Shown one piece after another: positions 9,969 through 51,213 of a DNA stretch of 64,000 bases. Numbering within the stretch: position 1 is the stretch's first letter; each line of letters starts with the position of its first letter. The stretch covers positions 21,053-85,052 of the forward strand of contig CALSCP010002362.1 of NCBI GenBank assembly GCA_943704425.1, given 5' to 3'. Position numbers and translations under genes: made by a program. Origin of the DNA: Ministeria vibrans ATCC 50519 (taxonomy: Eukaryota; Protista; Filasterea). Below the pieces are notes generated by a model, which was not told where the DNA came from, did no database searches, and saw nothing but the letters and a program-made list of their open reading frames with translations.

Positions 9969-11916
9969 GATTCCCCTACTACAAGCAAATCATGAGAGAG
10001 AGCCACAAGTTGCGAAACAAAAATCAACAGCGCCTTCTCACACACCCGCTAGTTCGAAACGGTCTCAAATTATACTAGCAATGATGGGCCACAGACTTGA
10101 ATAGTTTACAAACAAAGGAAAGAGGGAAGAAAGGTTGGGATCAAGTGAGGTGACAAGCAAGAAGGCTGAAGAAGAAAACTCGGTCCCATTGAACCTACCG
10201 CACTTCAACAAGTGCCACTGTCCACTGACCACATATGAGACATACCCCAAGCAGAAGCGATGAATGAACGTAGAATTCCAGGCGGCACGAACGAAATGGA
10301 GAAAAGCAGAATGGAAGCAGAATGTCGAAAAGTCGCAAGACGTCGCCTCCGCCTGGCAAAAGGCTATTTTCGCATTCGCCCGCCACCAACGCGTCACGCG
10401 AGGTTGAGGGATTGGTCGCGTCCTTGAATGAGCGCACATCTTTTGACGAAAGTTGCGTTTTCAGCATAAAGGAAGGAATAAAACCCATCCCCAGCAACTG
10501 ACGACCACCATCGTCAAAGTCAGAGATACACACACCCGTCACTTACAACAGTGGGTGGGGCGGAAGCGGTTTACTTGTGCAGAATTTGCAGAATTCACAG
10601 ACGACGATTCTTTCAGCTTTATCAAAAAACAAGCGAGAGTCGCTCCCAAACAAAATCCTAAGCCTCCGGGACAAGTCGCACGCCACCATTGTAACACAAA
10701 CACTATATACAAGCCCCGGCGCCATGCGGCATCGTTATTAGATGGTCGTGAATGTATTGTCGTTTCAGTTTGGCGACACCAGAGCGAAAAATTCATTCGA
10801 ACAACTTCAGCGAGTCAGGGAGCAATACGGACAAGCTGAACAATGACATGTACGCTTTGGGCTTACTGTGTGTGATAGAGTCCGCGCAGGTTCTTCAAAC
10901 GTCCAGAGTTGATGAAAAAAGGAGACTCCCCAAGCCCAGAGCAGTTGATATTTTTTACGATTCTAGCCAGGCCGCACTCTTTTTTCACCCCTCCCAATCT
11001 TCTCAGCGTGCTTCACTGTCTCACTGAAGGTAGGCGGATGTTGTGAGCGTGTGAGAGAGAGAGAATCGGGGGGTTGAAGTTTTTTTTGTTGCGATTTGAA
11101 AACCTCCGCTGGAGCGGTTCCTCTGTCCTCAGTTTTGCAACATATGTTATATCTATCAGTGTGGAGGTGAACCTGTCGGGTTTTGGAAGCAGCGAGGCTT
11201 GTAGTGGAGCGAAAAGTTTCACACGGTTTTTTGAAGTTTTTTTTCCTTGCTTGTGCTTGTCTTTGGACAGACTGTGTGCTCAGTGTGTGGGGTTGGGAGA
11301 GCGGAATCTAACACTCAACCCAATGTTTTTTGTGTGTGGTGGTCTTTTCGAGTGGACCTGACAAAAAGCCAAAGAAGGTCCTTCGACAAAGATTTTATTG
11401 AAAAACTTGCTTACATACCGTCGCTGTGTGACTTTTTATTTGTTTGGCACTCGTTTTCTTGTTTGTCGAAATACGCTAAAGTAACAGCGAACTCAATTTT
11501 CGTTTTTTCCCAAGGTTGAGTTATTCCGTAACGCATTCGTTGAGGCTGGATAACAAAAATTCATCAAAAATGCCCCGATTCGCATGTACTTCTGGTAAGA
11601 GTTGGCGGAGGGTTCAGTTAAGATTTCGATATATACTGTTGGCTCGTACCAGGCGTTGTGTGGTGGACAAAGGGGATCCCTGTCACATTCCCTGCGTCGA
11701 TCGGTTGTCTCTGGTTCCAATATTGGCTGTTCTTTCTTTGTTGTGTCCTATTTGATACAGTCTTTCCCTGTGGGGTAAACGCCAAAGACATTGTACAGGG
11801 GTCTTCTCGCCCAGTTCTTGGTACCTGGGTCTTGCGCGCGAATTTGTGACTTGTTGTTGAATCTGCAAGAGTTTTCCCCTGCTTACACTCTCTGTAATCA
11901 CGTAGCGAACTTTGTC

Positions 11917-14172
11917 ATGGTCGCGACTCTCCTGTTTGCGGCGACCGCGACCGCCGACAGCGACAAAGCCTTCATCGCGACTGTTGACGGGAATCTGCAG
12001 CTCAGTGCGGCACCGAACCGCTCCGTCATCGTCGAAGGTGTTGGCGACCTGGCGGCGAACCTGACGACACTGCATGTCGGTAACGAGGAGCTGCGCACAG
12101 CCAACGACGAGCTCCGCGCAATGCTGCATGCGGTGGAGGTGAATCTGACGCAAGTCACATCTCTTATCTCTACCGTGGCGACGCTTGTGGTGGACGTCAC
12201 GGAACTGCGCGCAGAGAACACAGAATTGCGCGCAGAGAACACCGAGCTCCGTCGCAGCCTGACGAGTCTCTCGTTCACTACCACCCTGCTGCTCGACCAT
12301 GTCGGACTGAACACGACCAATACGACTACACCACCGGCGCCAACTCCCGGCACTTGCGCGTATTCTGAGTACTCGGACTATTCTCTCTGCTCCGCCCTCT
12401 GTGACGGCGGTACGCAGGGCCGCTCCCGCAATGTGACCGTCGACATTCCCGGCTTGTCGTGCAATGGTACCGCCAATCTGGTGGATACTCGCTCTTGTAA
12501 TACACACGCATGCGCGGTGGACTGTGTGCTTGGTGCCCCCGGCAACTGGAGCGAATGCTCGGCGACGTGTGGCGGCGGACAAAAATTTCGCTTCCGCCCC
12601 ATTCTCATGCATCCCCAGAACGGTGGCGTCGCCTGTCCGTCTCTGGTTGACACGACCTCGTGCAACACACAAGTTTGCCTGACCACCATCTGCCCCGGCG
12701 GCGTCTTCACGACAGCATCTTCTCTCCAACGTCTCAAGGAGTGTGACTTTATCGCCGGCGACGTAGTTCTCTCTGGCATGGTTGATGTGATTGTCCTCAG
12801 TGACTTTATGGGCAATGTCACGCAAATTAACGGGACGCTCCGTGGATTCTCGGCGGTGGGTATCACATCATTTGGCTTGATGAACCTGACCCACATCACC
12901 AGCAACTTTGAGATGATTAATATGGACGGTCTCACTGACTTTGCAGGACTAGAGAAAGTGGTGGTGATTGGTGGAGATTTTATCTTGGATGACTGTCGCT
13001 CTTTGGTTAATATCACCGGCCTTGGAGTGACATCTATTGGAGGCAAGTTGGATGTAAAAAACATGCCGGCGATGACCACACTTGGACTGGCGAATCTGAC
13101 GGAGATCGCCGGTGACTTTACGCTCTCGGACGGGCCACAAAAAATGGAACTTCTTGTGTCCATTGCTTTCAGCCGGCTGAGCACGACCTCGGGCTTTTCT
13201 ATAACTATTTCGTTCACGCGTGGAATGGAGTTGCTCGCAGTCATGTCGTTCCCTGCCCTCACTTCGACTTCGTCCTTTACCATTAATGTGGGGGGTTCAG
13301 GACTATATGTACTTACAACCATTTCTTTCCCCGTTCTCATGTCAACGTCGGCCTTCATTATTTATGCTGGAAGTTCAGGAATGGCGGATCTCACAACCAT
13401 CTCGTTCCCTGACCTCGTGTCAACGTCATCCTTTTCCATTTCTACCAGTTCAGGAGGAATGGCACAACTCACAACCATGTCGTTCCCTGTCCTCATGTCA
13501 ACGTCATCCTTTTCCATCTCCTCCACGCATATTGGCGGAATGCAGCGACTCGCAACAATATCTTTCCCTGCTCTCTCATCAACGTCGTCATTTTCCATTT
13601 CCGCGGGGGAAACTACCTCAATGATGGTTCTCACAACCATCTCGTTTCCTGTTCTAACGTCAACATCGACTTTTTCCATTTCTGCGACCGTAAGTTCTAG
13701 TATGCCAGCTCTCTCAACCCTATATTTCCCTGCCCTCTCATCAGCTGCATCCTTCTCCATTGCTTCTTCTGCAACTGCCCCCGTTTTCCCTTCCCTTCTA
13801 AGCCTTTTTTCATTCAACAATCTCACACGGGTGTCCGACGGACAACTTTTTCTCTCTCGATGCGATTCTCTCACTTCCATTTCCGGCTTTACGTCACTCT
13901 CACGCGCCCATTCGCTCCGAATGGAATATCTCCCTGCCCTGACCACCATCCAAGCACTCACCTCTCTGCAAACAATCGACAACAGTCTGATTGTTCAAAA
14001 CACCGCCCTTGCCTCGGTCGACTTTCTCTCCTCTGTGACATCTATCGGCACGACCACATCGATCACGAGCAACTCTCGATTGGCTCTGTGTCAGTCGCTG
14101 CAGTCGAGCCTCCAAAGTGCGACCGCCGGGACGACGACCATCAGTGGCTACGGCTCTCTTGATGCGTGCTAG
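11917..14172 (+). CDS. Secreted protein, paralogue B of 7869-9968 (divergent orientation; 5' end uncertain)
   Basis: Same architecture, near-identical TSP1, L-domain entry and C-terminal cap (RLALCQSLQSSLQSATAGTTTISGYGSLDAC); longer coiled coil; repeats LTTISFPVLxSTSSFSI. Confidence 0.88.
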   Translation: MVATLLFAATATADSDKAFIATVDGNLQLSAAPNRSVIVEGVGDLAANLTTLHVGNEELRTANDELRAMLHAVEVNLTQVTSLISTVATLVVDVTELRAENTELRAENTELRRSLTSLSFTTTLLLDHVGLNTTNTTTPPAPTPGTCAYSEYSDYSLCSALCDGGTQGRSRNVTVDIPGLSCNGTANLVDTRSCNTHACAVDCVLGAPGNWSECSATCGGGQKFRFRPILMHPQNGGVACPSLVDTTSCNTQVCLTTICPGGVFTTASSLQRLKECDFIAGDVVLSGMVDVIVLSDFMGNVTQINGTLRGFSAVGITSFGLMNLTHITSNFEMINMDGLTDFAGLEKVVVIGGDFILDDCRSLVNITGLGVTSIGGKLDVKNMPAMTTLGLANLTEIAGDFTLSDGPQKMELLVSIAFSRLSTTSGFSITISFTRGMELLAVMSFPALTSTSSFTINVGGSGLYVLTTISFPVLMSTSAFIIYAGSSGMADLTTISFPDLVSTSSFSISTSSGGMAQLTTMSFPVLMSTSSFSISSTHIGGMQRLATISFPALSSTSSFSISAGETTSMMVLTTISFPVLTSTSTFSISATVSSSMPALSTLYFPALSSAASFSIASSATAPVFPSLLSLFSFNNLTRVSDGQLFLSRCDSLTSISGFTSLSRAHSLRMEYLPALTTIQALTSLQTIDNSLIVQNTALASVDFLSSVTSIGTTTSITSNSRLALCQSLQSSLQSATAGTTTISGYGSLDAC

Positions 14173-14480
14173 GGATTATGGGGTTTATTAAAGTTTTCGA
14201 GTCGTTTTCTGCGTTTAGTCAAGGTAGTGTCGACATGCGGCAATGTTGATGTTGTCAAAACAGCAGTGGTCGTAGGTGACGATGAAGTTGTTCTTCTTCT
14301 TGTGTGTGTGGACAGGGATCGCAAGAAGAAGAGAGGGCGAGTATGGCGTTGGGGTAAGGTCGAGTTGGTGCCGGAATCGAAAGTGAGGTCTAGAGCCGGA
14401 ATAGTTGCGAGTATACGAAGCAGAAAAATTACCCACTCCTGTGCTTCAAAAGATCGTATTGGTGTAATCTAATAAAATTA

Positions 14481-14675
14481 CTACACCTTCATTGCCCCCC
14501 TCTTCGTTCCTTCCACCCCTAAAGTAGGTCTCTGCTCAAACTCGAGCAGCTCAACGCCGAGATCACGAATATTCGCGCTTGGGATCAACGCACTCAATCT
14601 TTCCTCAAGAACCGCAAACGAGGGCCGATCTGCCGCTTCTCCACTCCAGCACGTTATCAAAATCAAAAACACATT
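14481..14675 (-). other. Duplicated terminal kinase exon (alternative last exon or relic)
   Basis: NVFLILITCWSGEAADRPSFAVLEERLSAL...AMKV* parallels the real last exon 14981-15172; intact tctgcag acceptor in the same phase. Confidence 0.75.
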
Positions 14676-14980
14676 CTGCAGACAAGTCAATAAATGTCAG
14701 CCACAACAATCAACAACAACAGTCAATCAATGTCAGCCACAACAATCAAAACACTACCAAACACTGATTTTTGGACACCCAGGTGGCAAGCAGTGGGAAG
14801 ACGCCTTATCTGCTTTGTGATATACTTTAACGAGTAGGAAAAGAGTTTTCAACAAAATACAGCGCAAAGAAAGGGGATAATTCTTAGACTAAAGCAGACC
14901 AACAGCAACCAATAATACCTCATGAAACCCATCAAACCCGGTTCTGATCTTTAACAAAATTCCATCAAGGGACCTTTTAC

Positions 14981-17900
14981 TCACACCTTAACAACCCCTT
15001 TTGTGGCATCCACACCCAACACCGCCCGCTGCTCAAACTGCAGCAACTCAGCGCCAAGGTCGCGGGCACTAGCACGTGTGATCAGCGCAGATAAGCGTTC
15101 CTCAAGAGCCACAAACGAGGGCCGCTCTGCCGCCTCTGCACTCCAGCACGCTTTCAAAATTGAAAACACGTTCTGTAGAGACGAGTTGAACGTACACTTG
15201 TCAGCTAAAAAAAATTTCAACAACAACATTAACACTGACCTTCGGACATCCAGGCGGCAGCTCAAGCCTGCGACCGGTTTGCACAAACGGTACAATGCCG
15301 TTGATAGGCACATCGCGGTACGGCCGGACCTTGCCAAACGTGAACAGCTCCCACACAAGGACACCAAATGACCACTACATACAGTGTTACACTCAAGACA
15401 CCTGCTACCGTGCCATCACTTACCACATCACTCTTCTCAAGCAGGAACACCGCCTCCGTCAGCGCCTCCACTGGCATCCAGCGCATTGGCAGCTGACTCC
15501 CGTGCGGAATCTTGTAGCGGTCGTGACCTCGCTCAAGGCGCACCGCCAAGCCAAAGTCGCTCACCTTGACCACATTCTGTGCATATACAAGGCAGTTGCG
15601 CGCCGCAAGGTCGCAGTGCAGCACACCATTCTCCGCAAGAAAGCCCATGGCCGACGCCACCTGCACAGCCACGCCAATCAATTCCATAGGCGACACCTCA
15701 AGACGGTGGCGTTGCTTAAAGAGGCGCCGCACAAAGTTGCGCAGGTCACCGTACATGGCCAGCTCGGTCACAAGAAGCCACGGTTCGCGGTCCATGCATA
15801 CACCGGCCAGTTTGACAATACCCGCGTGTTTCGCACCCACATCCGCCAGTAGCTGTGCCTCGCGCACAAAATCGTCACGATCGCGCTGAGACGCATTCGC
15901 ATTGAGTGTCTTCACCGCGACAAGCTCTTCCTTCGTCGACGCAAGAATGACAAACCCAAAATTGCCTTTGCCGATCTCCTCCTCAAACTCCAGGCGCGAA
16001 CGGTCAAACTACAAAGATTAGCACAAATTCTTAATCATAACTCTTCTTCCCTCCCATCCAATGAAAATTACCTGACTTTCCACCATGAGTGCATTCATGT
16101 CGTGGCGCTCGTCATCGTACTCGCCCTCGTCATCGGCGACCTCGACAAGCTTGGGCATTGCTTCAAACACAGCCTTGTGCCGCTGGTGTTCCTGCGCCAG
16201 ACTCGCTCGTGTCTTCGTCTTGAGCGACAGCGACTGGACAATCAACAAGACACGCTCTGACTGCTGCGCCATCGCTACACCATCCTCCTCGAAAGCACCA
16301 CCGCCCTCCTCCATATCCTCCACGCGGTTACCGTACACAGTATCGCCATCGACGGGCTCTTCGCGATTCCCATATTCGGCGACCAACGACGCCGGTAGGT
16401 AGCCAGTTCCGTCACTGTTGCCGTACAGGGTTCCTTGGTAATCGCTGCCAGTCGCGTTGGAGTACCCTGCGCCCATGTAGCCGTAGCCCTCATGCTCATC
16501 GTCCTCGTCCTCGTCCTTGTCAACCAGACCGTAGTCGTTTTCGCCGCCGGCCACTAAGGAATGGAGATCGCCCTCCTCAGCGGCATCCTGGCTAGGCTCG
16601 CGCATACTCATTGTCTCTGCGAAACTGAGTAGTTGAATGGAGCGCTTTCGCCCAAGCAAGTCTGGATGCACAGAGGCAGAAGCGGACGATGCCTTTGGCT
16701 GCAGGCCAGCATGCATGCCACCCTCAACAGTCATGTCGTCGCATGCTTCGACGGAGTCTGGAATTCCCGACGCGCGCCCGCCGCCCTCGGACCACTCGTT
16801 GCTGTGACTGAAGCGCTGTCGCACATGAGCGATCGCATTCTTCCACTCGCGGCGCGGTCGTCCACTCAGGATGAAGAGAACCGCCAATAAGGCACCCTGT
16901 AGCGTGTTGAAGATCACAAACAAGTACCACAGGGCCACCTGCTGCGCTGCAATTGCCACTATAAATAAGGAAAGAATTAGAGAGAAAAGCGGTTTATTCG
17001 ATGTCACAGTATGATAATAGAAGCGACATTCTCATTACGTGGTGTGAAAAAAAACGTGACAAACTTACCGTAGGCAAAGATCCAGGTGAGACCAAGACAC
17101 GCGACAATGCCAAAGAAAACGCGCACCCTCGACTTGTCACTGGCGGCCTTGTCAGTAGCACGCGAGGTGCGAGCCAGATGATAGAAGACCGCAACCGTCA
17201 CAATCAGGTTGTACACGAGTACGCCGGCGATAGGAACAAGAAAGCCAATGATCAGTCCCCACTTGGAGTGAATCCAACAGTGATTCTCGCCGCCAAACTG
17301 AACACCGCCCTGGGTGGCCACATCGACAAGGGTAATCACGAGGGTAGCGACCGCTGCGCTGGCCCAGCCAACGATGAAGTAGAAGCGCAACGAGCGGCCC
17401 TGACCAAACACCTTGACAAGCAGAAAGTACAGGTTGTGCGCAATGCATGCCATCCATATGAATGAGGCCATGAGAGCAAAGTACAGGAGTATGCCGACAG
17501 CGCGACAGACTGACGTGTTCTGAGTCTTGGTGATGCCGGCGAGAAAAATCAAGTTGACGGCAAACAGCGCCACTGCCAGGTTTGCAATCATGGCAATGGG
17601 CTGCGTGCGGATCTTCTTGAGCAGCGCGTACGAGAGAACAATAAACAAACTTGCCACCATTGACAGTACGCATCCCAGGTAAGTGAGCACCGAGAGAGCG
17701 CGTGCGTCTGTCTCGCTCAACTGGGTCGCAAGTGGCGAGTTCCAGCCGGCGAGAATGGCAAACGAGGTCATATAGTGGCAGCGACGACAGCGGACAAGCG
17801 CCTGTGAATCAAGCTGCTTGCAGCGGCAGACTGTCTTGGTCGCGTGGCGCGTGTGTGCACGGCAGAGAGACGAAGACCACTGGCGCTTCCAGCGATCCCA

Positions 17901-20900
17901 CTGGACACAGAGACGATCGTCGGAAAACGACTCGTTGCGATGTTGCAGCGTTACGTCAATGGCGACTTCGTCGGGCAGATCCGTGACAGTGAGGTTCCCA
18001 AGCGAGAAGCCCACAATGTTGGAGTCGACCTTGTCAGACTGTGTGTCGTCCGTCGAGACAAACGGGTTCGAGTGGCTAACGAGAAAGCGCGACGACAAAC
18101 AGCTTTCGTTGAGACCGAGGTGAGCAACAAAACCACGCGGCACAACAAGTGTCTCGTTCAGACCCGTGTACGAACTTTCCACAAGCGAAGCGTTTTGGCG
18201 ACGCGCAAATTGAGCAGCCAAGCGACCTTGGACCGTGAACTGCGAGCTTCTGTCGCAGGAGACACGCGATGACGCCGCCCCAACAAATTGGTCAATGAGT
18301 TCGGGCGCGGCGCTGCTCTGGTTCGACTGGCGCAGTGTGTTGAGGGCCGAGGGCTCAAGTAGATTGCTCAGCACCGCAAAGGACGATGTCAGGGCACCAG
18401 TCGCCAGGTCCGCCTGTTCTCCACTGCTGGTGTCATTGCCCACGAGCGAATCGAGGACAGAGCCAAGCATTGACACGATGGTGTTGGCAGATGAGGCGGT
18501 GTGGTTGGTGTCGTCGAGCCAAGTGTTGTTATTGGTGAGTTGTAGAAGGGGGATGGTGGCTGCGGCTGCGGCTGCGACCGAACCGCTTGTGGTGGTTTTA
18601 TGCAGAGTGAGGGCAGTGAGAAGACACGTGACGGGAGCACTGCCACCGGATCCGGCCGTGTCGACAGTGCCCGCAGTGAAGGCAGCGGGGTTGATAAAGG
18701 CGGACACGCACAACTGGGGATTGTTGCCGAGTCGCGCGTCGCCAGTGATGTTCTGCAGACGAGCGAGGTCAAGTGCAATCAGACTCGGGAGCGATTCGGC
18801 AATAAGGGAGCCGTCAATATGCGCGAGGTGGGGCATGATCAAGTCGACAACGCGCGTCGCCGGTGAGTCGACAACACGGATATCACCGCGTACGCGACGC
18901 AACAAAGGCACTTGAACTGACTCGACTGACGTGGTGTTGATCGTGAGAGGGCCGTACAGATCACCGAGCGTGGCCAAGGGTGCGACCGAGCGCACATCCA
19001 CTCCAGAAAGATGAAGCCCTCCAAAAATGTGCGAGCAGCCAGCGTAGGCGTCGACACGCGCTTGTGAGGTGACAACTGTCTCGACGCGGCAGTCGCTTTG
19101 ACACTGGGGCCCCACAACCTCGGCGATACAGGTGCAGTTGTAGCGGTTCGTGTTCGCGTCGTCTTCGGCACAAGTGCCATCGTTCTCACAGGGTGACGAT
19201 GCGCACTCGTCAATGTTCGACTCGCACTGGGCGCCGGTGAAGCCCGGAGAGCACACGCAAGAGAAGGCGTCAAGAGCATTCACACATGTGCCGGCATTGA
19301 TGCATGGTGACGAGGAGCACTCATCGACTGCGAGTAGAGCCAGCTGTGCCGATGAAGCAGCGGTGGAGCCACACGAGCTGGTTGAGGAGAGAGGAACGCA
19401 GGTGCTGAGGCGACGACGGCCCGTGCTCAGTGGGCTCTCGGCCAGTGTCCAGGTGGACGGACTGTCAAGCGGCGCGGCGACATATACGAGACCATCGACA
19501 GTAGTTGCGTTTGCGTCGCGCGCAATGTGGATTTCGACAGCGCGCGCAAAGTCGGAGCCATTGAGCGACGGCACCCACAAGGAGTACACAATCTGCTGTG
19601 CCTTGACGGCGTTTGAGGGGAGTGTGGGTACTGCCAAGGCCGCCACAATGTCAGCAAGGACAACAGTTCCGTTCGCTGTGATGGCGTTTGCTGGTATGAT
19701 GACGGCGAGAGCGCCAAACGAAAGGGTTCCGCCTGCAGGCCCAACGATGGTGCCGGTCTGTTCGCAAGCGGCACCAACATAGTTCGCGGCGCACACACAC
19801 GTCGTACTGTTGATACCGTCAACACATGTGGCCCCGTTGGCACACGTGCTGGATGCACACTCATCAATGTTCGACTCGCACGCGATGCCTGTGAAACCGG
19901 CCAGACATGGGATTTTCACGCCACAAGTGGGACCCGTATAGAGGGTATTGCAGGTGCACAAAAACCCAGCCACGCTGTCTGTGCACGAACCGCCGTTTGA
20001 ACACGGCGACGAAGCACACTCGTCAACGTTGACATCGCACAATGTACCAGTCCAGCTCGAGTCGCATGTGCACGAGAAGGCGGAGTGGGTATCGACACAA
20101 ACAGCGCCGTTATGGCAAGGCGACGAAGCACACTCGTTGATGGCGTCATCGCAAAACTGACCGGTGAATCCTGGCGCACAGAAACACATAGTGCTGTTGG
20201 CGGCACAGGTTCCATCGTTTGCGCACGGTGTAGTGGTACAGTTGGTGGCGCAGGGGCTCGCATCGAGAATAATGATAATGTCGTCGGCAAAGCTGAGCAA
20301 TGCGTTGAGACCAAACTCGATGCGTTCGAACGACGCGGTTTGTTGTAGCACTGACTCAGCAGTGTAGTCGACGAGGGCGCCCGAGCAAGGGAGTGATTGG
20401 TGAAGCCAGTTTGTCGGGTCGAGGAAAACCCCGTTGCCAGCCGTGTTGGTGAAGACAGCGAGGGCGCTGTCGCAGGAAGTTCCGGTCCGCGTCGTCGGGC
20501 ACGCACAGATGTACGAAGACAGAGAAGCAATGCAAGTGCCACCGTTTGCGCACGGGGACGAGGCGCACGGGTCTGTGCATGTGTGGTTCGAGCTGCGAAA
20601 AATGGGCAAATTGAGTATCTGGGTTGAGCTTCGGTCTAAGAGATCGAAAATGGTGGCATTGAATTCTCTTATTGACTTACGCATGGGTACTGAACAGAAT
20701 GCCAGTATTGGGCTCAAAAGTCGCGTACGTATCCGTTGTAAGGGCCATTCCCGAAGCTGTCGCAGATGCCCTCAGAGAAACCGCCGCCGAAGAGGCGACA
20801 ACGACCAAGTCTCCGGAGCATGGGATCGCTCCTGCGTTCCAGTTGGCACTCACATCCCAAAATCTCGAGGAGTTGCTCGAAAAGAGTCGAGTGTCGGCTC

Positions 20901-20964
20901 TTACGGGCACGAGCAGGCAGAGGAGAAACAGGGCAACTGAAGTCGTGAGTTTGGGAGACAACAT
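14981..20964 (-). CDS. Adhesion GPCR-tyrosine kinase fusion receptor (AMN-like x2, EGF repeats, ZU5-like, receptor L domain, GAIN/GPS, 7TM, Tyr-rich linker, TK)
   Basis: Exons ~20964-20681, 20592-17069, 16958-16072, 16008-~15424, ~15363-15240, 15172-14981 joined by GT-AG introns (first three junctions checked in frame); signal peptide; NIDECASSPCxNGGTC EGFs; IVGPAGGTL..IIPANAI; CVQWD..WSSSLC..TSFAIL; family-B 7TM (TYLGCVLS, WMACIAHNLY, CWI, LGLTWIF, FNTLQG); kinase IGKGNFG, VAVKTL, HCDLAARNCLV, DFGLA, LPMRWMPVE. Confidence 0.88.
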
Positions 20965-21392
20965 ACCCGCCTGGTCCAGGGCAAGCGTGTCAGGTAACGT
21001 AAATGTGCGGTTTAGCCTCCCCTTTAAGGCCTGGCTTGTTGTTTGAGGCACGCTGAAGATAGTCGGATGGATAGAGAAAGAGAGAAAGAGAGACGAGAGT
21101 CAGTTTCGACAAATTTCCGCTTCAACATAGCTACGGCCGTGAGACACGATTCCGGTCATAACAGACAATTTCAACATTAATAAACAGACGAATAACAACC
21201 CCGTACACCAATAACATGACCAGATGGAGTGGAAATGGTACAGAATTTCCACGCGGCATGAAAGAACCACCTCGAAAAGAACGCCACAAAAAAAAAAAAA
21301 AAAAAAAAAACGTTTCAGCTTGTAAGACATTGCTTCTGCAGTAAAAGTACAAGAGGGGATGTGTGTATTGTAGTATGTAGACAAGCAGCGTC

Positions 21393-21688
21393 AAAAGAGC
21401 ACCAGGCTGTTGCCATAGACGGCAGAGACAGCGACGACTGCGCCGAAAATGACTACATCGCGTGCGACTCGCCTACGCATGGAAAACGGTCAGTGGCGCC
21501 ATGGAGGCGGCGGCGGCGGGCACAGGGCCGATGTCTTGCTCATGGGGACACGGTTGCTGTGAACCGCTGTGGAGGGGGGCTTACAGAATGGCGCTGATGG
21601 GGGTCGCGGGAGCGGACGGGCCAGCGGCTCCTGCGCTGGGCATTGACGGCTCTTCGGGGAACTCAAGCGAGGGGTTGGGGTCGTCCAT
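21393..21688 (-). CDS. ~61-aa tail-anchored microprotein, Tom6-like (2 exons; absent from ORF track)
   Basis: Splicing gtaagc...ctgac...gcgtag gives MDDPNPSLEFPEEPSMPSAGAAGPSAPATPISAILRVARDVVIFGAVVAVSAVYGNSLVLF*. Confidence 0.6.
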
Positions 21689-49610: not shown

Positions 49611-51213
49611 TCACCGATGCACGTCGCTGAGAAAGGGATGGTGAAGCAGCTCGTGGCAGGTGGGGCGGTCGGAGGGCAGACGCGCAAAGCAGCAGAGAAG
49701 GAAGTCACGCGCGTGCGGGTCGAGAGAGGCGGGCAGAGGTGGCGGCGACTCGGAAGACGCAATCTTGAACATAAGTGCAAAGTGGTTGGGTGAGCTGTCG
49801 GTGTCGCACCAGGGCGGTAGAGCCGTTAGCATCTCCAAGACACAGCAGCCAATGGACCAGACGTCGGCACGGCGTCCGTACGACTCGCCACGAATCACTT
49901 CGGGTGCAATAAAGGCTGGCGTGCCTCGCGTCTCCACAAACTCATTCGTCATCGTGTGTGCCTTGGCCAGCGTCGCACTCGCCCCAAAATCCGCCACCTT
50001 CAGCGTGCTATCGGTGTCGTCGGTGCCGTCGCCACTCGCCGTCACCAGCAGATTAGCGCCCTTGAGATCGCCGTGGAGCACACGCTCGTCGTGCAGGTAG
50101 GCGACACCGGCGCACAGCTGACGAGTGTACACTCGTGTCTGGTGCAGCGACAGCGGACCGGATCGCGCCAGAATTGCCGAAATTGAGCCGCCGGCACAGT
50201 ATTCCAGGAAAATGTTGAGATGATACTGACTGCGCGAGTGACCGAACAGTCGCACAATGTTAGGGTGACGCAGTTCGCTTAGAATCGCAATCTCAGTGTT
50301 GACATTAAGCGCATTGCCAGGACGAATAGGCAGACGTTTGACGGCCGCCATGGCACCTGTCTCACCGTGGACTGCCAGGTGGCACACGGCACACGCGCCA
50401 TTGCCCAACACGTCTGTCAGGTACCACACAGTCGAGTTGCTGGCATCATCTTCATCAAGATCGTCCGCATCGTTGATGCTCACACTGCTCATGTCGCCGC
50501 TGAGCAGACTACTCAGCTCGCTACAGTTGTCCGTTGTGGTGCTCTCAATTAAACTCTCCATTGTGTTGCTCTCCACCCCATCCTCTTGGCCTTCCTCCTC
50601 CTCCTCCCCCACCACTGTCGTATCCAGATCCTCGGCCTGGCCAACATCCTCAAAACCGTCACCGTCATCGTCGTCGTCGTCGTCGTCGTCGGCGGCAATG
50701 CCTTCGTCTGCTGTGCCCACCAGATCAAACGCAGTACGCACAATGGGAGGCATTGGACCGCGGATGGAGACGGCATCGGCGGGAATCGGTGACGGAGGCA
50801 CACCCATCCCTGGCAACTGGGGTGTTGCCAGCCAGCCATCAATACCAAATGCAACATCCACATCGCTACCGACAATGGGGGGAAATGCCGCCGAGGAGGA
50901 CGAAGCCGATTGCGACGCCGATGACGATGTCGTCAGACCTCTCGAGACACGTCGCTGCTGCTGCTGCTGTTGTTGTTGTTGTTGCACGGGAGCTGCATGT
51001 GGACTCGTTGCCACTGGTCGAGACTGTCCAACCCACAAGGGCGAGAGGCGTCCTTGACGTGCAGCGGGGGACGTTGAGTGAGGAGGTGTGTCGCGGCGAC
51101 TCGTGTGCTCAGGTGACGATGTGTCGAGCAGCTGTTGTAAGACAGACTCTTGAGGCGCAGCCGGTGCCGTTTCGTCGGCCTTCTTATCGTTGTCTTCTGC
51201 CACAGTTGACGTG

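What the first reader, a model, noticed from the sequence alone, without database searches (positions are those of the whole stretch)
14981..20964. Adhesion GPCR fused to a tyrosine kinase, with an RTK-type L domain in its ectodomain
Seen: GT-AG splicing links EGF/ZU5-like/L-domain/GAIN/7TM exons to a kinase with TK hallmarks (DLAARN, LPMRW). Established: animal adhesion GPCRs have no kinase domain and animal RTKs are single-pass; GPCR-kinase fusions are known in some protists. The receptor L domain (CSHIFGGLHL...NNPQLC) is the ligand-binding fold of EGFR/insulin receptors. Inference: a hybrid receptor of roughly 1,850 aa coupling adhesion input to both G protein and phosphotyrosine output.
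Basis: partly seen in the sequence, partly recalled or inferred. Interest (0 to 1): 0.82.

Follow-up and report, generated by a model that had tools for sequence, protein, structure and literature searches.

The report
Adhesion GPCR fused to tyrosine kinase
A six-exon gene in an unnamed single-celled relative of animals encodes one 1,868-residue receptor that joins a complete adhesion-type seven-helix receptor to a complete tyrosine kinase; two paralogues share the design, which is a new variant of the recently described GPCR-tyrosine-kinase fusions.

Summary
On the minus strand, 20964-14981, six exons with GT-AG introns and consistent phases give a 1,868-codon frame. It encodes a signal peptide, EGF repeats, a ZU5-fold module, a receptor L domain, a GAIN domain, a class-B 7TM, a 265-residue Tyr-rich linker and a full tyrosine kinase.

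The fusion does not rest on predicted splicing. A paralogue on another contig (C155) carries the same domain order in one uninterrupted ORF of at least 2,576 codons. Every exon boundary here maps to adjacent residues of that ORF. All segments, the linker included, show dN/dS of 0.04-0.26. A third, more divergent member exists (C1645). The three kinases form one clade inside the tyrosine-kinase group.

GPCR-TK fusions were published in 2025 for choanoflagellates and sponges. Those 7TMs found no animal homologues, and none was found in other holozoans. This one is a genuine adhesion GPCR. Its genome has T-box and integrin-beta genes, so it is probably not a choanoflagellate.

Dual G-protein and phosphotyrosine output is untested. 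The GPS cleavage histidine and the conserved TM3 glutamate are both replaced.

No transcript data were available. The spliced protein was never joined; all searches were exon by exon.

The parts
20681..20964 (-). Exon 1: start ATG at 20964, signal peptide (about 20964-20893), then a weak amnionless-like module
   Evidence: ATG followed by a hydrophobic leader. Donor GTAAGT at 20680. Pfam Amnionless 19.5 bits, below its cut-off. Weak internal repeat with an exon-2 stretch, E 2e-4.
17069..20592 (-). Exon 2 (3,524 nt): the ectodomain and TM1-TM6
   Evidence: Open frame with no stops. Acceptor CAG at 20593-20595 and donor GTAAGT at 17068. Aligns at 58% identity to residues 808-1962 of the C155 ORF and ends exactly at 17070.
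19761..20579 (-). EGF repeats (one at 20579-20469, a cluster at 20255-19761)
   Evidence: Pfam EGF/hEGF, six scored stretches, E 1.5e-34.
19332..19772 (-). ZU5-fold ectodomain module with an invariant G-R-R-R, then Cys...Cys-Gly
   Evidence: No Pfam or PDB sequence hit. AlphaFold model from 11 in-genome copies has pLDDT 80. The top 16 Foldseek hits are ankyrin ZU5 domains, E 1e-5, TM 0.6.
19092..19325 (-). Two further EGF repeats
   Evidence: Pfam EGF best stretch, and EGF_CA.
18705..19040 (-). Receptor L domain
   Evidence: Pfam Recep_L_domain 22.1 bits here and 33.4 bits in C155. Single-sequence PDB hits are ErbB2 L1 only. A profile of nine in-genome copies hits insulin receptor L2 at 1.3e-7, plus EGFR, LET-23 and ErbB2 L1.
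17748..18632 (-). GAIN domain: six-helix subdomain A plus beta-sandwich subdomain B
   Evidence: AlphaFold model pLDDT 82.5. Foldseek top 10 hits are all adhesion-GPCR GAIN domains, BAI3 at 8e-13. HMMER alignment to ADGRL3, ADGRG2 and ADGRG6 chains runs through GAIN-B.
17751..17777 (-). Atypical GPS site, H-Y-M/T-S-F-A-I-L: the -2 His is replaced by Tyr and the tethered-agonist-like peptide is kept
   Evidence: Alignment to ADGRG6. C155 has the same Y-M-T. At least nine other adhesion GPCRs of the genome keep C-x-C-[NT]-H-L-T.
16867..17702 (-). Class-B 7TM domain: TM1-6 in exon 2, intron 17068-16959, TM7 in exon 3
   Evidence: Pfam 7tm_2 101 bits. The top 25 PDB hits are adhesion GPCRs, best 3e-27; secretin receptors reach only 1e-4. 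Seven hydrophobic helices. TM6 has L-T-W and TM7 has F-N-T-L-Q-G.
16072..16958 (-). Exon 3: TM7 plus a 265-residue acidic, Tyr-rich cytoplasmic linker (16866-16072)
   Evidence: Open frame from TM7 to the donor at 16071. 63% identical to C155 residues 1964-2286, with dN/dS 0.20.
16324..16536 (-). Tyrosine motif array (D-Y-G-L, G-Y-G-Y, three Y-G-N)
   Evidence: These motifs are invariant in all three paralogues, and C1645 has more copies.
15424..16008 (-). Exon 4: kinase subdomains I-VIII (GKGNFG, VAVK, HCDLAARN, DFG, PMRWMPVE)
   Evidence: PK_Tyr_Ser-Thr profile 1-187, E 2.4e-48. The 60 PDB hits shown are all tyrosine kinases. Motifs were read.
15240..15374 (-). Exon 5: kinase subdomains IX-X
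   Evidence: PK_Tyr_Ser-Thr profile 188-231. 93% identical to C155.
14981..15172 (-). Exon 6: kinase subdomain XI, C-terminal tail and stop codon
   Evidence: PK_Tyr_Ser-Thr profile 233-258. TGA at 14983-14981.
14481..14690 (-). Intact duplicate of exon 6 with its own AG acceptor and stop: a possible alternative last exon
   Evidence: Direct repeat 14498-14682 versus 14995-15179, 75% nt identity, 497 nt apart. Open frame ending in K-V-stop. 55% identical to the C155 tail by tblastn, against 47% for exon 6 (60% against 49% in the local alignment).

Best explanation
The locus is one protein-coding gene for a type-I-oriented, seven-pass receptor. Its N-terminal half is a complete adhesion GPCR: signal peptide, EGF repeats, ZU5-fold module, receptor L domain, GAIN domain and class-B 7TM. 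Its cytoplasmic tail is a receptor-tyrosine-kinase-style output: a 265-residue linker with conserved Y-G-N and other tyrosine motifs, followed by a catalytically complete tyrosine kinase domain. This much is shown. It belongs to a three-member family in this genome that arose from a single fusion and then duplicated. The mechanism is inferred. Ligand or cell-surface contact at the ectodomain changes the GAIN/7TM conformation or clusters receptors. The tethered kinases then phosphorylate the linker tyrosines in trans. YxN is the classical Grb2-type SH2 motif, so SH2 adaptors dock there and start phosphotyrosine signalling. In effect the 7TM replaces the single helix of an RTK. The GAIN domain is probably not self-cleaved, because the GPS His is Tyr. 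The window copy is a non-RD kinase (HCD), so it probably does not depend on activation-loop phosphorylation. G-protein coupling may persist alongside but is not shown.
For: The gene model has canonical introns and one frame. The kinase profile is continuous over exons 4-6. C155 carries EGF x11, Recep_L, 7tm_2 (profile 3-249) and PK_Tyr (profile 1-258) in one stop-free ORF of at least 2,576 aa. In a per-segment local alignment the exons map to C155 residues 1749-1962, 1964-2286, 2287-2481, 2482-2526 and 2527-2576 in turn; tblastn gives the same order. dN/dS is 0.04-0.26 with dS above 1 in every segment, linker included. C1645 is a third paralogue with 7TM, linker and kinase collinear and introns at other positions. 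The three kinases form a clade (98/98) inside a 100/100 clade with animal Abl, ROS, ALK and InsR. GAIN, ZU5 and L domains are confirmed by structure or profile. Seven TM helices place the kinase in the cytoplasm. Catalytic Lys, Glu, Asp, Asn and DFG are all present. The linker tyrosine motifs are invariant. The genome has at least 20 SH2 matches and three G-alpha loci.
Against: No transcript evidence was available. Two in-frame Met codons lie 8 and 4 residues before the exon 3/4 junction, so a kinase-only product from an internal start cannot be excluded. The HRD Arg is Cys in this copy. The GPS -2 His is Tyr. The conserved TM3 Glu of class-B receptors aligns with Ile. Canonical tethered-agonist release and G-protein coupling are therefore both uncertain. 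No orthologue with the fusion was found outside this genome. All support thus comes from one assembly, though from three contigs.
Confidence: 0.85

Rival explanations
1. There are two genes. An adhesion GPCR with a long tail ends by intron retention at the stop at 16018-16020, and a separately transcribed cytoplasmic tyrosine kinase starts at one of the Met codons just before 16072.
For: Reading through the exon 3 donor reaches a stop after 17 codons. Two Met codons lie shortly before the junction, and the second is conserved in all three paralogues. No transcript data were available.
Against: C155 has no intron or stop between the 7TM and the kinase. The linker is conserved in the frame shared by TM7 and the kinase, with dN/dS 0.20. 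The same order is kept in three diverged paralogues on three contigs. Exon 4 starts at kinase profile position 1 with no Met of its own.
Confidence: 0.05
2. The fusion is real, but the kinase of this copy is a regulatory pseudokinase or scaffold, because HRD is HCD and APE is PVE. The receptor would signal mainly as an adhesion GPCR, with the tail serving as a docking platform phosphorylated by other kinases.
For: The HRD Arg is Cys and the APE motif reads P-V-E in this copy. The linker holds many conserved tyrosines that any of the genome's more than 170 tyrosine-kinase-type matches could phosphorylate.
Against: The G-loop, VAVK Lys, alpha-C Glu, catalytic Asp and Asn, and DFG are all intact. 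C155 and C1645 keep HRD. The kinase exons are the most constrained parts of the gene, with dN/dS 0.04-0.09. Non-RD kinases are generally active (established knowledge).
Confidence: 0.1
3. The apparent fusion is an assembly or annotation artefact: a chimeric contig joining an adhesion GPCR gene and an RTK gene.
For: The assembly is fragmented into 2,860 contigs and contains N runs.
Against: There are no N runs in 14300-21500. The same architecture occurs on contigs C155 and C1645 at 58-62% and about 30-50% identity, so they are independent sequences and not copies of one misjoin. The linker is specific to these three loci.
Confidence: 0.01

Closest known systems
GPCR-TKs of choanoflagellates and sponges (Garcia De Las Bayonas and King, eLife 2025, PMC12716839)
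   Same: A 7TM receptor with a C-terminal kinase of the true tyrosine-kinase group, found in a close relative of animals. None has been characterised functionally.
   Different: The published choanoflagellate GPCR-TK 7TMs found no animal homologues and formed no single 7TM family. Here the 7TM is an unambiguous adhesion-class 7tm_2 with a GAIN domain, and its best hits are animal latrophilin-like, ADGRG6 and ADGRG2 receptors. The paper found none in holozoans other than choanoflagellates and sponges, whereas this genome carries T-box and three integrin-beta genes. I could not read that paper's sequence files, so overlap cannot be fully excluded.
Animal adhesion GPCRs (ADGRL/latrophilin, ADGRG6/GPR126, ADGRB/BAI)
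   Same: A signal peptide, adhesive repeats, a GAIN domain directly before a class-B 7TM, a T-x-F-A-[IV]-L tethered-peptide motif, the TM6 Trp and the TM7 N-x-x-Q-G.
   Different: No animal adhesion GPCR is known to have a kinase domain. Here the GPS -2 His is Tyr, 14 residues are inserted in the GPS loop, and the TM3 Glu is Ile.
EGFR/ErbB and insulin-receptor families of receptor tyrosine kinases
   Same: A receptor L domain in the ectodomain, a tyrosine kinase with DLAARN and P-x-R-W signatures, and tyrosine docking motifs of YxN type.
   Different: Those RTKs are single-pass and carry two L domains flanking a furin-like Cys-rich region. Here there is one L domain and seven helices. The kinase does not group with the InsR-type rows used as references; it groups with other kinases of this genome.
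GPCR-TKL/K, GPCR-PIPK and other 'GPCR-bigrams' of oomycetes, amoebozoans and acanthoecid choanoflagellates (PMC5784254, PMC6033456, PMC12716839)
   Same: The general design: a 7TM receptor with an enzymatic output domain fused to its C-terminus.
   Different: Their kinases are TKL, other Ser/Thr-type or lipid kinases, and their 7TMs are not adhesion class and have no GAIN domain.

Membership tests
Adhesion GPCR (class B2) | Class-B (7tm_2) seven-helix domain | tested here: met
   Pfam 7tm_2 101 bits against a cut-off of 20.6. The top 25 PDB sequence hits are adhesion GPCRs, best 3e-27. Seven hydrophobic helices.
Adhesion GPCR (class B2) | GAIN domain immediately N-terminal of TM1 | tested here: met
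   AlphaFold model pLDDT 82.5 with helical subdomain A and beta subdomain B. Foldseek top 10 hits are GAIN domains, BAI3 at 8e-13.
Adhesion GPCR (class B2) | Canonical GPS cleavage motif H-L/T(S) | tested here: not met
   Y-M/T here and in C155, and Pfam GPS scores 21.9 bits against a cut-off of 22.5. Other adhesion GPCRs of the genome keep H-L-T. Some accepted animal adhesion GPCRs also lack cleavage, so this does not exclude membership.
Adhesion GPCR (class B2) | Coupling to heterotrimeric G proteins | not testable with these tools
   Three G-alpha loci exist in the genome. The TM6 Trp and TM7 N-x-x-Q-G are kept, but the TM3 Glu is Ile.
Tyrosine kinase group (TK) | Complete protein kinase catalytic core | tested here: met
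   PK_Tyr_Ser-Thr profile 1-258 over exons 4-6. G-loop, VAVK, alpha-C Glu, catalytic Asp and Asn, and DFG are present; the HRD Arg is Cys.
Tyrosine kinase group (TK) | TK-specific signatures (D-L-A-A-R-N and P-x-[KR]-W) and grouping with bona fide TKs rather than TKL | tested here: met
   Both motifs are present. The 60 PDB hits shown are all TKs. In the tree it lies in a 100/100 clade with animal Abl, ROS, ALK and InsR.
Tyrosine kinase group (TK) | Tyrosine phosphotransfer activity | not testable with these tools
   Needs an in vitro kinase assay.
GPCR-TK (sense of PMC12716839) | 7TM domain and tyrosine kinase domain in one polypeptide | tested here: met
   One frame over six exons. The intron-free paralogue has both domains in one ORF. 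Transcript proof is lacking.
GPCR-TK (sense of PMC12716839) | Kinase domain in the clade formed by choanoflagellate and sponge GPCR-TK kinases | not tested
   The paper's sequence files are not held. No fusion protein appeared among the hits and 49/50.
Receptor L domain (EGFR/insulin receptor type) | Sequence match to the L-domain beta-helix family | tested here: met
   Pfam 22.1 bits against a cut-off of 21.8; C155 scores 33.4 bits. The profile search hits only insulin receptor, EGFR, LET-23 and ErbB2 L domains, best 1.3e-7.
ZU5 domain | ZU5 beta-sandwich fold | tested here: met
   Foldseek top 16 hits are ankyrin ZU5, prob 1.00, TM 0.6. There is no sequence-level match to Pfam ZU5, so this is fold resemblance only.

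The most novel reading that the evidence does not exclude
This is an independently evolved and so far undescribed receptor class: true adhesion GPCRs (GAIN plus class-B 7TM) whose cytoplasmic tail is a receptor tyrosine kinase module. It occurs in a non-choanoflagellate unicellular relative of animals, outside the reported range of GPCR-TKs. In it, 7TM activation would directly gate phosphotyrosine signalling, possibly together with G proteins.
Probability: 0.4. Interest if true: 0.75.

Novelty: new variant of a known kind. Interest (0 to 1): 0.62.

Why it matters
Adhesion GPCRs and receptor tyrosine kinases are the two big receptor families that expanded before animals arose. They are normally separate and talk only through transactivation. 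A natural protein that wires an adhesion-GPCR sensor directly to a tyrosine kinase shows that domain shuffling between the two systems happened in unicellular holozoans. It adds an adhesion-class case to the few GPCR-TK fusions known, probably in a lineage where none was reported. It also offers a compact test system for two questions: whether a 7TM conformational change can activate a tethered tyrosine kinase, and whether GAIN cleavage is needed for that.

Tried and rejected
- Public proteins with the same fusion. Two word-index searches and one full HMMER scan of 1.84 billion representatives, using the 7TM-linker-kinase part of the C155 ORF, gave none. A local phmmer of the 7TM, linker and kinase parts against all 395 fetched proteins found no protein with both 7TM and kinase. 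Kinase-only hits fill the top 150, so fusions with unrelated 7TMs could lie lower. This blank is weak evidence.
- P0333, the best outside 7TM relative. It has a Ser-rich tail that ends in a stop and no kinase, so it is not a family member.
- P0253, the best outside kinase relative. It is this same organism's contig C2128 seen in an ENA metagenome, and that contig has no 7tm_2 match.
- C1856 (L003). A 7TM and a kinase lie 5.4 kb apart and are probably two genes. I did not count it.
- Naming the organism. HSP70 matches animals at about 70-73%. Its only near-identical matches are metagenome contigs and an MMETSP0661 entry labelled Alexandrium margalefii. Literature searches on those accessions gave nothing. 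About 50 7tm_2 loci, three integrin-beta genes and two T-box genes fit a filasterean such as Ministeria, but this is unproven. Integrin beta alone is not decisive, because one choanoflagellate has it.
- Supplementary files of PMC12716839, PMC13366479 and PMC12132279 are not held.
- Rfam found nothing in 14000-21600.
- The joined spliced protein was deliberately never assembled, searched or folded. All work was exon by exon or on the intron-free paralogue.

Full report
**1. What is in the sequence**

The minus strand between 20964 and 14981 holds six open stretches. They are joined by five short introns of 49-110 nt, all with a GT donor and an AG acceptor.

| Exon | Coordinates |
|---|---|
| 1 | 20964-20681 |
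| 2 | 20592-17069 |
| 3 | 16958-16072 |
| 4 | 16008-15424 |
| 5 | 15374-15240 |
| 6 | 15172-14981 |

The phases (2, 1, 0, 0, 0) add up to one frame of 5,607 nt. That is 1,868 residues, ending at TGA 14983-14981. Every search used single exons by reference, or the intron-free paralogue described below.

**2. Domains, tested one at a time**

- **Exon 1.** It starts with a hydrophobic signal peptide.
- **Exon 2, sequence matches.** It carries EGF repeats (Pfam E 1.5e-34). Recep_L_domain scores 22.1 bits, just over its cut-off, and the GPS motif scores 21.9 bits, just under. 7tm_2 scores 101 bits.
- **L domain.** The weak call was strengthened in two ways. The paralogue scores 33.4 bits. A profile built from nine copies in this genome hits only insulin-receptor L2 and EGFR, LET-23 and ErbB2 L1 domains in the PDB, best E 1.3e-7.
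- **'ZU5-like' stretch (19332-19772).** It has no sequence match. An AlphaFold model from 11 in-genome copies has pLDDT 80. Its top 16 Foldseek hits are ankyrin ZU5 domains, with E 1e-5 and TM about 0.6.
- **The 353 residues running up to and into TM1.** The AlphaFold model has pLDDT 82.5. It shows six helices followed by a beta sandwich. Its ten best Foldseek hits are all adhesion-GPCR GAIN domains: BAI3 (8e-13), BAI2, latrophilin, GPR126, CELSR1, GPR110, CD97 and GPR56.
- **7TM.** By sequence, the GAIN-B plus 7TM stretch finds only adhesion GPCRs at the top of the PDB list (ADGRG6 at 3e-27). Secretin-type receptors reach only 1e-4. The best public relatives are animal latrophilin-like and ADGRG6 proteins at 28% identity. 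Hydropathy gives six helices in exon 2 and the seventh at the start of exon 3. The tail is therefore cytoplasmic.
- **Kinase (exons 4, 5, 6).** They match PK_Tyr_Ser-Thr profile positions 1-187, 188-231 and 233-258. The profile runs straight through both kinase introns.
- **Kinase motifs.** Present are G-K-G-N-F-G, V-A-V-K, the alpha-C Glu, H-C-D-L-A-A-R-N, D-F-G, P-M-R-W-M-P-V-E, D-V-W-S-F-G and the subdomain XI Arg. The catalytic set is complete. The only departures are HRD to HCD (a non-RD kinase) and APE to PVE.
- **Kinase relatives.** The 60 PDB hits shown are all tyrosine kinases: EGFR, ABL, TrkB, FGFR3 and BTK.

**3. Is it really one protein?**

The window's genome (29.7 Mb, 2,860 contigs) has about 50 7tm_2 loci and more than 170 tyrosine-kinase-type matches.

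- **Paralogue C155.** On this contig both domains lie in one stop-free frame of at least 2,576 codons. The order is EGF x11, L domain, 7tm_2 (profile 3-249), about 300 residues, then PK_Tyr (profile 1-258).
- **Collinearity.** The C155 ORF aligns collinearly with the window gene at 58-62% identity (tblastn). In a per-segment local alignment the last part of exon 2 maps to residues 1749-1962. Exon 3 maps to 1964-2286, exon 4 to 2287-2481, exon 5 to 2482-2526 and exon 6 to 2527-2576. Each intron of the window gene therefore falls between adjacent residues of an uninterrupted paralogue. This validates the model without transcript data.
- **Selection.** Against C155, dS is above 1 (1.09-2.06) in every segment. 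dN/dS is 0.16-0.21 for the ectodomain, GAIN, 7TM and linker, 0.04-0.09 for kinase exons 4 and 5, and 0.26 for exon 6. The linker has thus been kept as coding sequence, in the frame shared by TM7 and the kinase, since an old duplication.
- **Third member, C1645.** It is 30-50% identical. It has the same 7TM-linker-kinase order with introns at other places, and it keeps HRD.
- **Linker specificity.** The linker matches only these three loci.
- **Kinase tree.** A maximum-likelihood tree used the exon-4 part of the kinase, 23 other kinase rows from this genome (C155 and C1645 included) and six animal tyrosine kinases. The three fusion kinases form one clade (98/98). Their nearest neighbours are three other kinases of this genome. 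All lie within a 100/100 clade holding Abl, ROS, ALK and InsR. This indicates one fusion event followed by duplications.

**4. Features peculiar to the subfamily**

- **GPS site.** The window gene reads H-Y-M/T-S-F-A-I-L and C155 reads R-Y-M/T-S-F-A-I-L. The His at -2, which acts in GAIN self-cleavage, is Tyr. Fourteen residues are inserted in the GPS loop. At least nine other adhesion GPCRs of the same genome keep C-x-C-[NT]-H-L-T-[SN]-F-A. The loss is therefore derived, and the receptor is probably not self-cleaved. The tethered-peptide motif itself is identical in both paralogues.
- **TM3.** The Glu conserved in class-B receptors (W-M-x-x-E) aligns with Ile. The TM6 Trp and the TM7 F-N-T-L-Q-G are kept.
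- **Linker motifs.** Invariant in all three paralogues are a basic G-R-[KR]-R-S-I motif, D-Y-x-L-x-D-K-D, G-Y-G-Y and three Y-G-N motifs. C1645 has more copies. YxN is the classical Grb2-type SH2 site (established knowledge). The genome has at least 20 SH2 matches and three G-alpha loci.

**5. Most likely mechanism**

- **Shown:** a single polypeptide with an adhesion-GPCR sensor outside and in the membrane, and a tyrosine-kinase module inside.
- **Inferred:** contact at the ectodomain alters the GAIN/7TM conformation or clusters receptors. The kinases then phosphorylate the linker tyrosines in trans, and SH2 adaptors dock. The 7TM thus plays the part of an RTK's single helix.
- **Open:** whether G proteins are also engaged. 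The loss of the GPS His and the TM3 Glu makes canonical activation uncertain.

Rivals, with my estimates:

| Rival | Estimate | Main argument against |
|---|---|---|
| Two separate genes | about 5% | the intron-free paralogue and the constrained linker |
| Scaffold with a weak or inactive kinase | about 10% | intact catalytic residues and the strongest constraint lying on the kinase |
| Assembly chimera | about 1% | three independent contigs |

**6. What is known**

GPCRs fused to protein kinases are known in oomycetes, amoebozoans and ciliates, where the kinases are TKL or other types (PMC5784254, PMC6033456, PMC10463195). The 2025 eLife survey (PMC12716839) described GPCR-TKL/K receptors in acanthoecid choanoflagellates. 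It also reported 11 GPCR-TKs in choanoflagellates and further ones in sponges.

That survey states that the choanoflagellate 7TMs found no animal homologues. It found no GPCR-TK in other holozoans, and none has been studied functionally. The same paper lists the receptor L domain among ectodomain modules of filastereans' adhesion GPCRs. In this genome an L domain lies about 2 kb upstream of the 7TM in at least five other adhesion-GPCR loci. The L domain is therefore not new in itself.

What differs here is the class of the receptor part. It is a full adhesion GPCR with a GAIN domain and clear animal homologues.

The host probably differs too. The genome has three integrin-beta genes and two T-box genes. 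It also has an adhesion-GPCR count like that reported for Ministeria vibrans. This points away from choanoflagellates. The organism could not be named, and one choanoflagellate does carry an integrin-beta domain.

No public protein with this fusion was found. The searches used have limits, and I could not read the paper's sequence files.

**7. Verdict**

Its functional inference of dual output is untested. This is a new variant of a known kind (GPCR-TK): an adhesion-class member, in a three-gene family, probably outside the reported taxonomic range. Interest is moderate to high.

Noticed in passing
window 14481-14690 (minus strand), with a relic of the exon-5 end near 14790-14765: A 497-nt tandem duplication carries an intact second copy of the last kinase exon, with its own AG acceptor and stop. 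It is 75% identical in DNA to exon 6 and closer than exon 6 to the C155 paralogue. It could be a mutually exclusive alternative last exon.
   Followed up: partly
window 19332-19772; also G000 contigs C155, C2516, C1597, C916, C1674, C313, C1494, C1670, C945, C807 (L014-L023): The ZU5-fold ectodomain module is a family of at least 11 copies. Several lie about 3 kb upstream of tyrosine kinase domains in what look like single-pass RTKs. All copies have an invariant G-R-R-R followed by two Cys, which looks like a furin/kexin-type processing site in the ectodomain.
   Followed up: partly
L058 (C572:51971-53030), L060 (C2584), L067 (C2066), L068 (C1103): Four class-B 7TM loci of this genome have an H-F-S-[DE] motif just before TM1 instead of the GPS C-x-C-x-H-L-T. 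H-F-S is the self-cleavage motif of ZU5/PIDD-type domains, so these may be 7TM receptors with a different autoproteolytic module.
   Followed up: no
L011:3-98 and more than 100 places in G000 (for example C905:113754-113845): A roughly 90-nt element, 75-88% identical between copies, is found on both strands and often at overlapping coordinates. It is scattered over many contigs and looks like a small palindromic dispersed repeat (MITE-like).
   Followed up: no
L007 (G000:C2175), P0135, P0397, L009, L011: The organism's HSP70 is identical to one on an ENA metagenome contig (SCHR19-1 series). It is 636/637 identical to a EukProt entry labelled Alexandrium margalefii (MMETSP0661). That dinoflagellate transcriptome probably contains this organism as a contaminant. 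Another contig of the same metagenome series is 99% identical in DNA to C2128.
   Followed up: partly
window 11791-14172 (plus strand): A convergent neighbour gene has an open frame of 793 aa. It carries TSP1-like Cys-rich repeats followed by a long leucine-rich solenoid of L-domain-like repeats.
   Followed up: no
window 49641-50414 (minus strand): A second kinase domain in the window lies in an open frame of 1,302 aa. In the kinase tree it sits on a very long branch outside the tyrosine-kinase clade.
   Followed up: no
window 14685-14749: Two 29-nt near-identical direct repeats lie 36 nt apart, in the sequence just upstream of the duplicated last exon.
   Followed up: no
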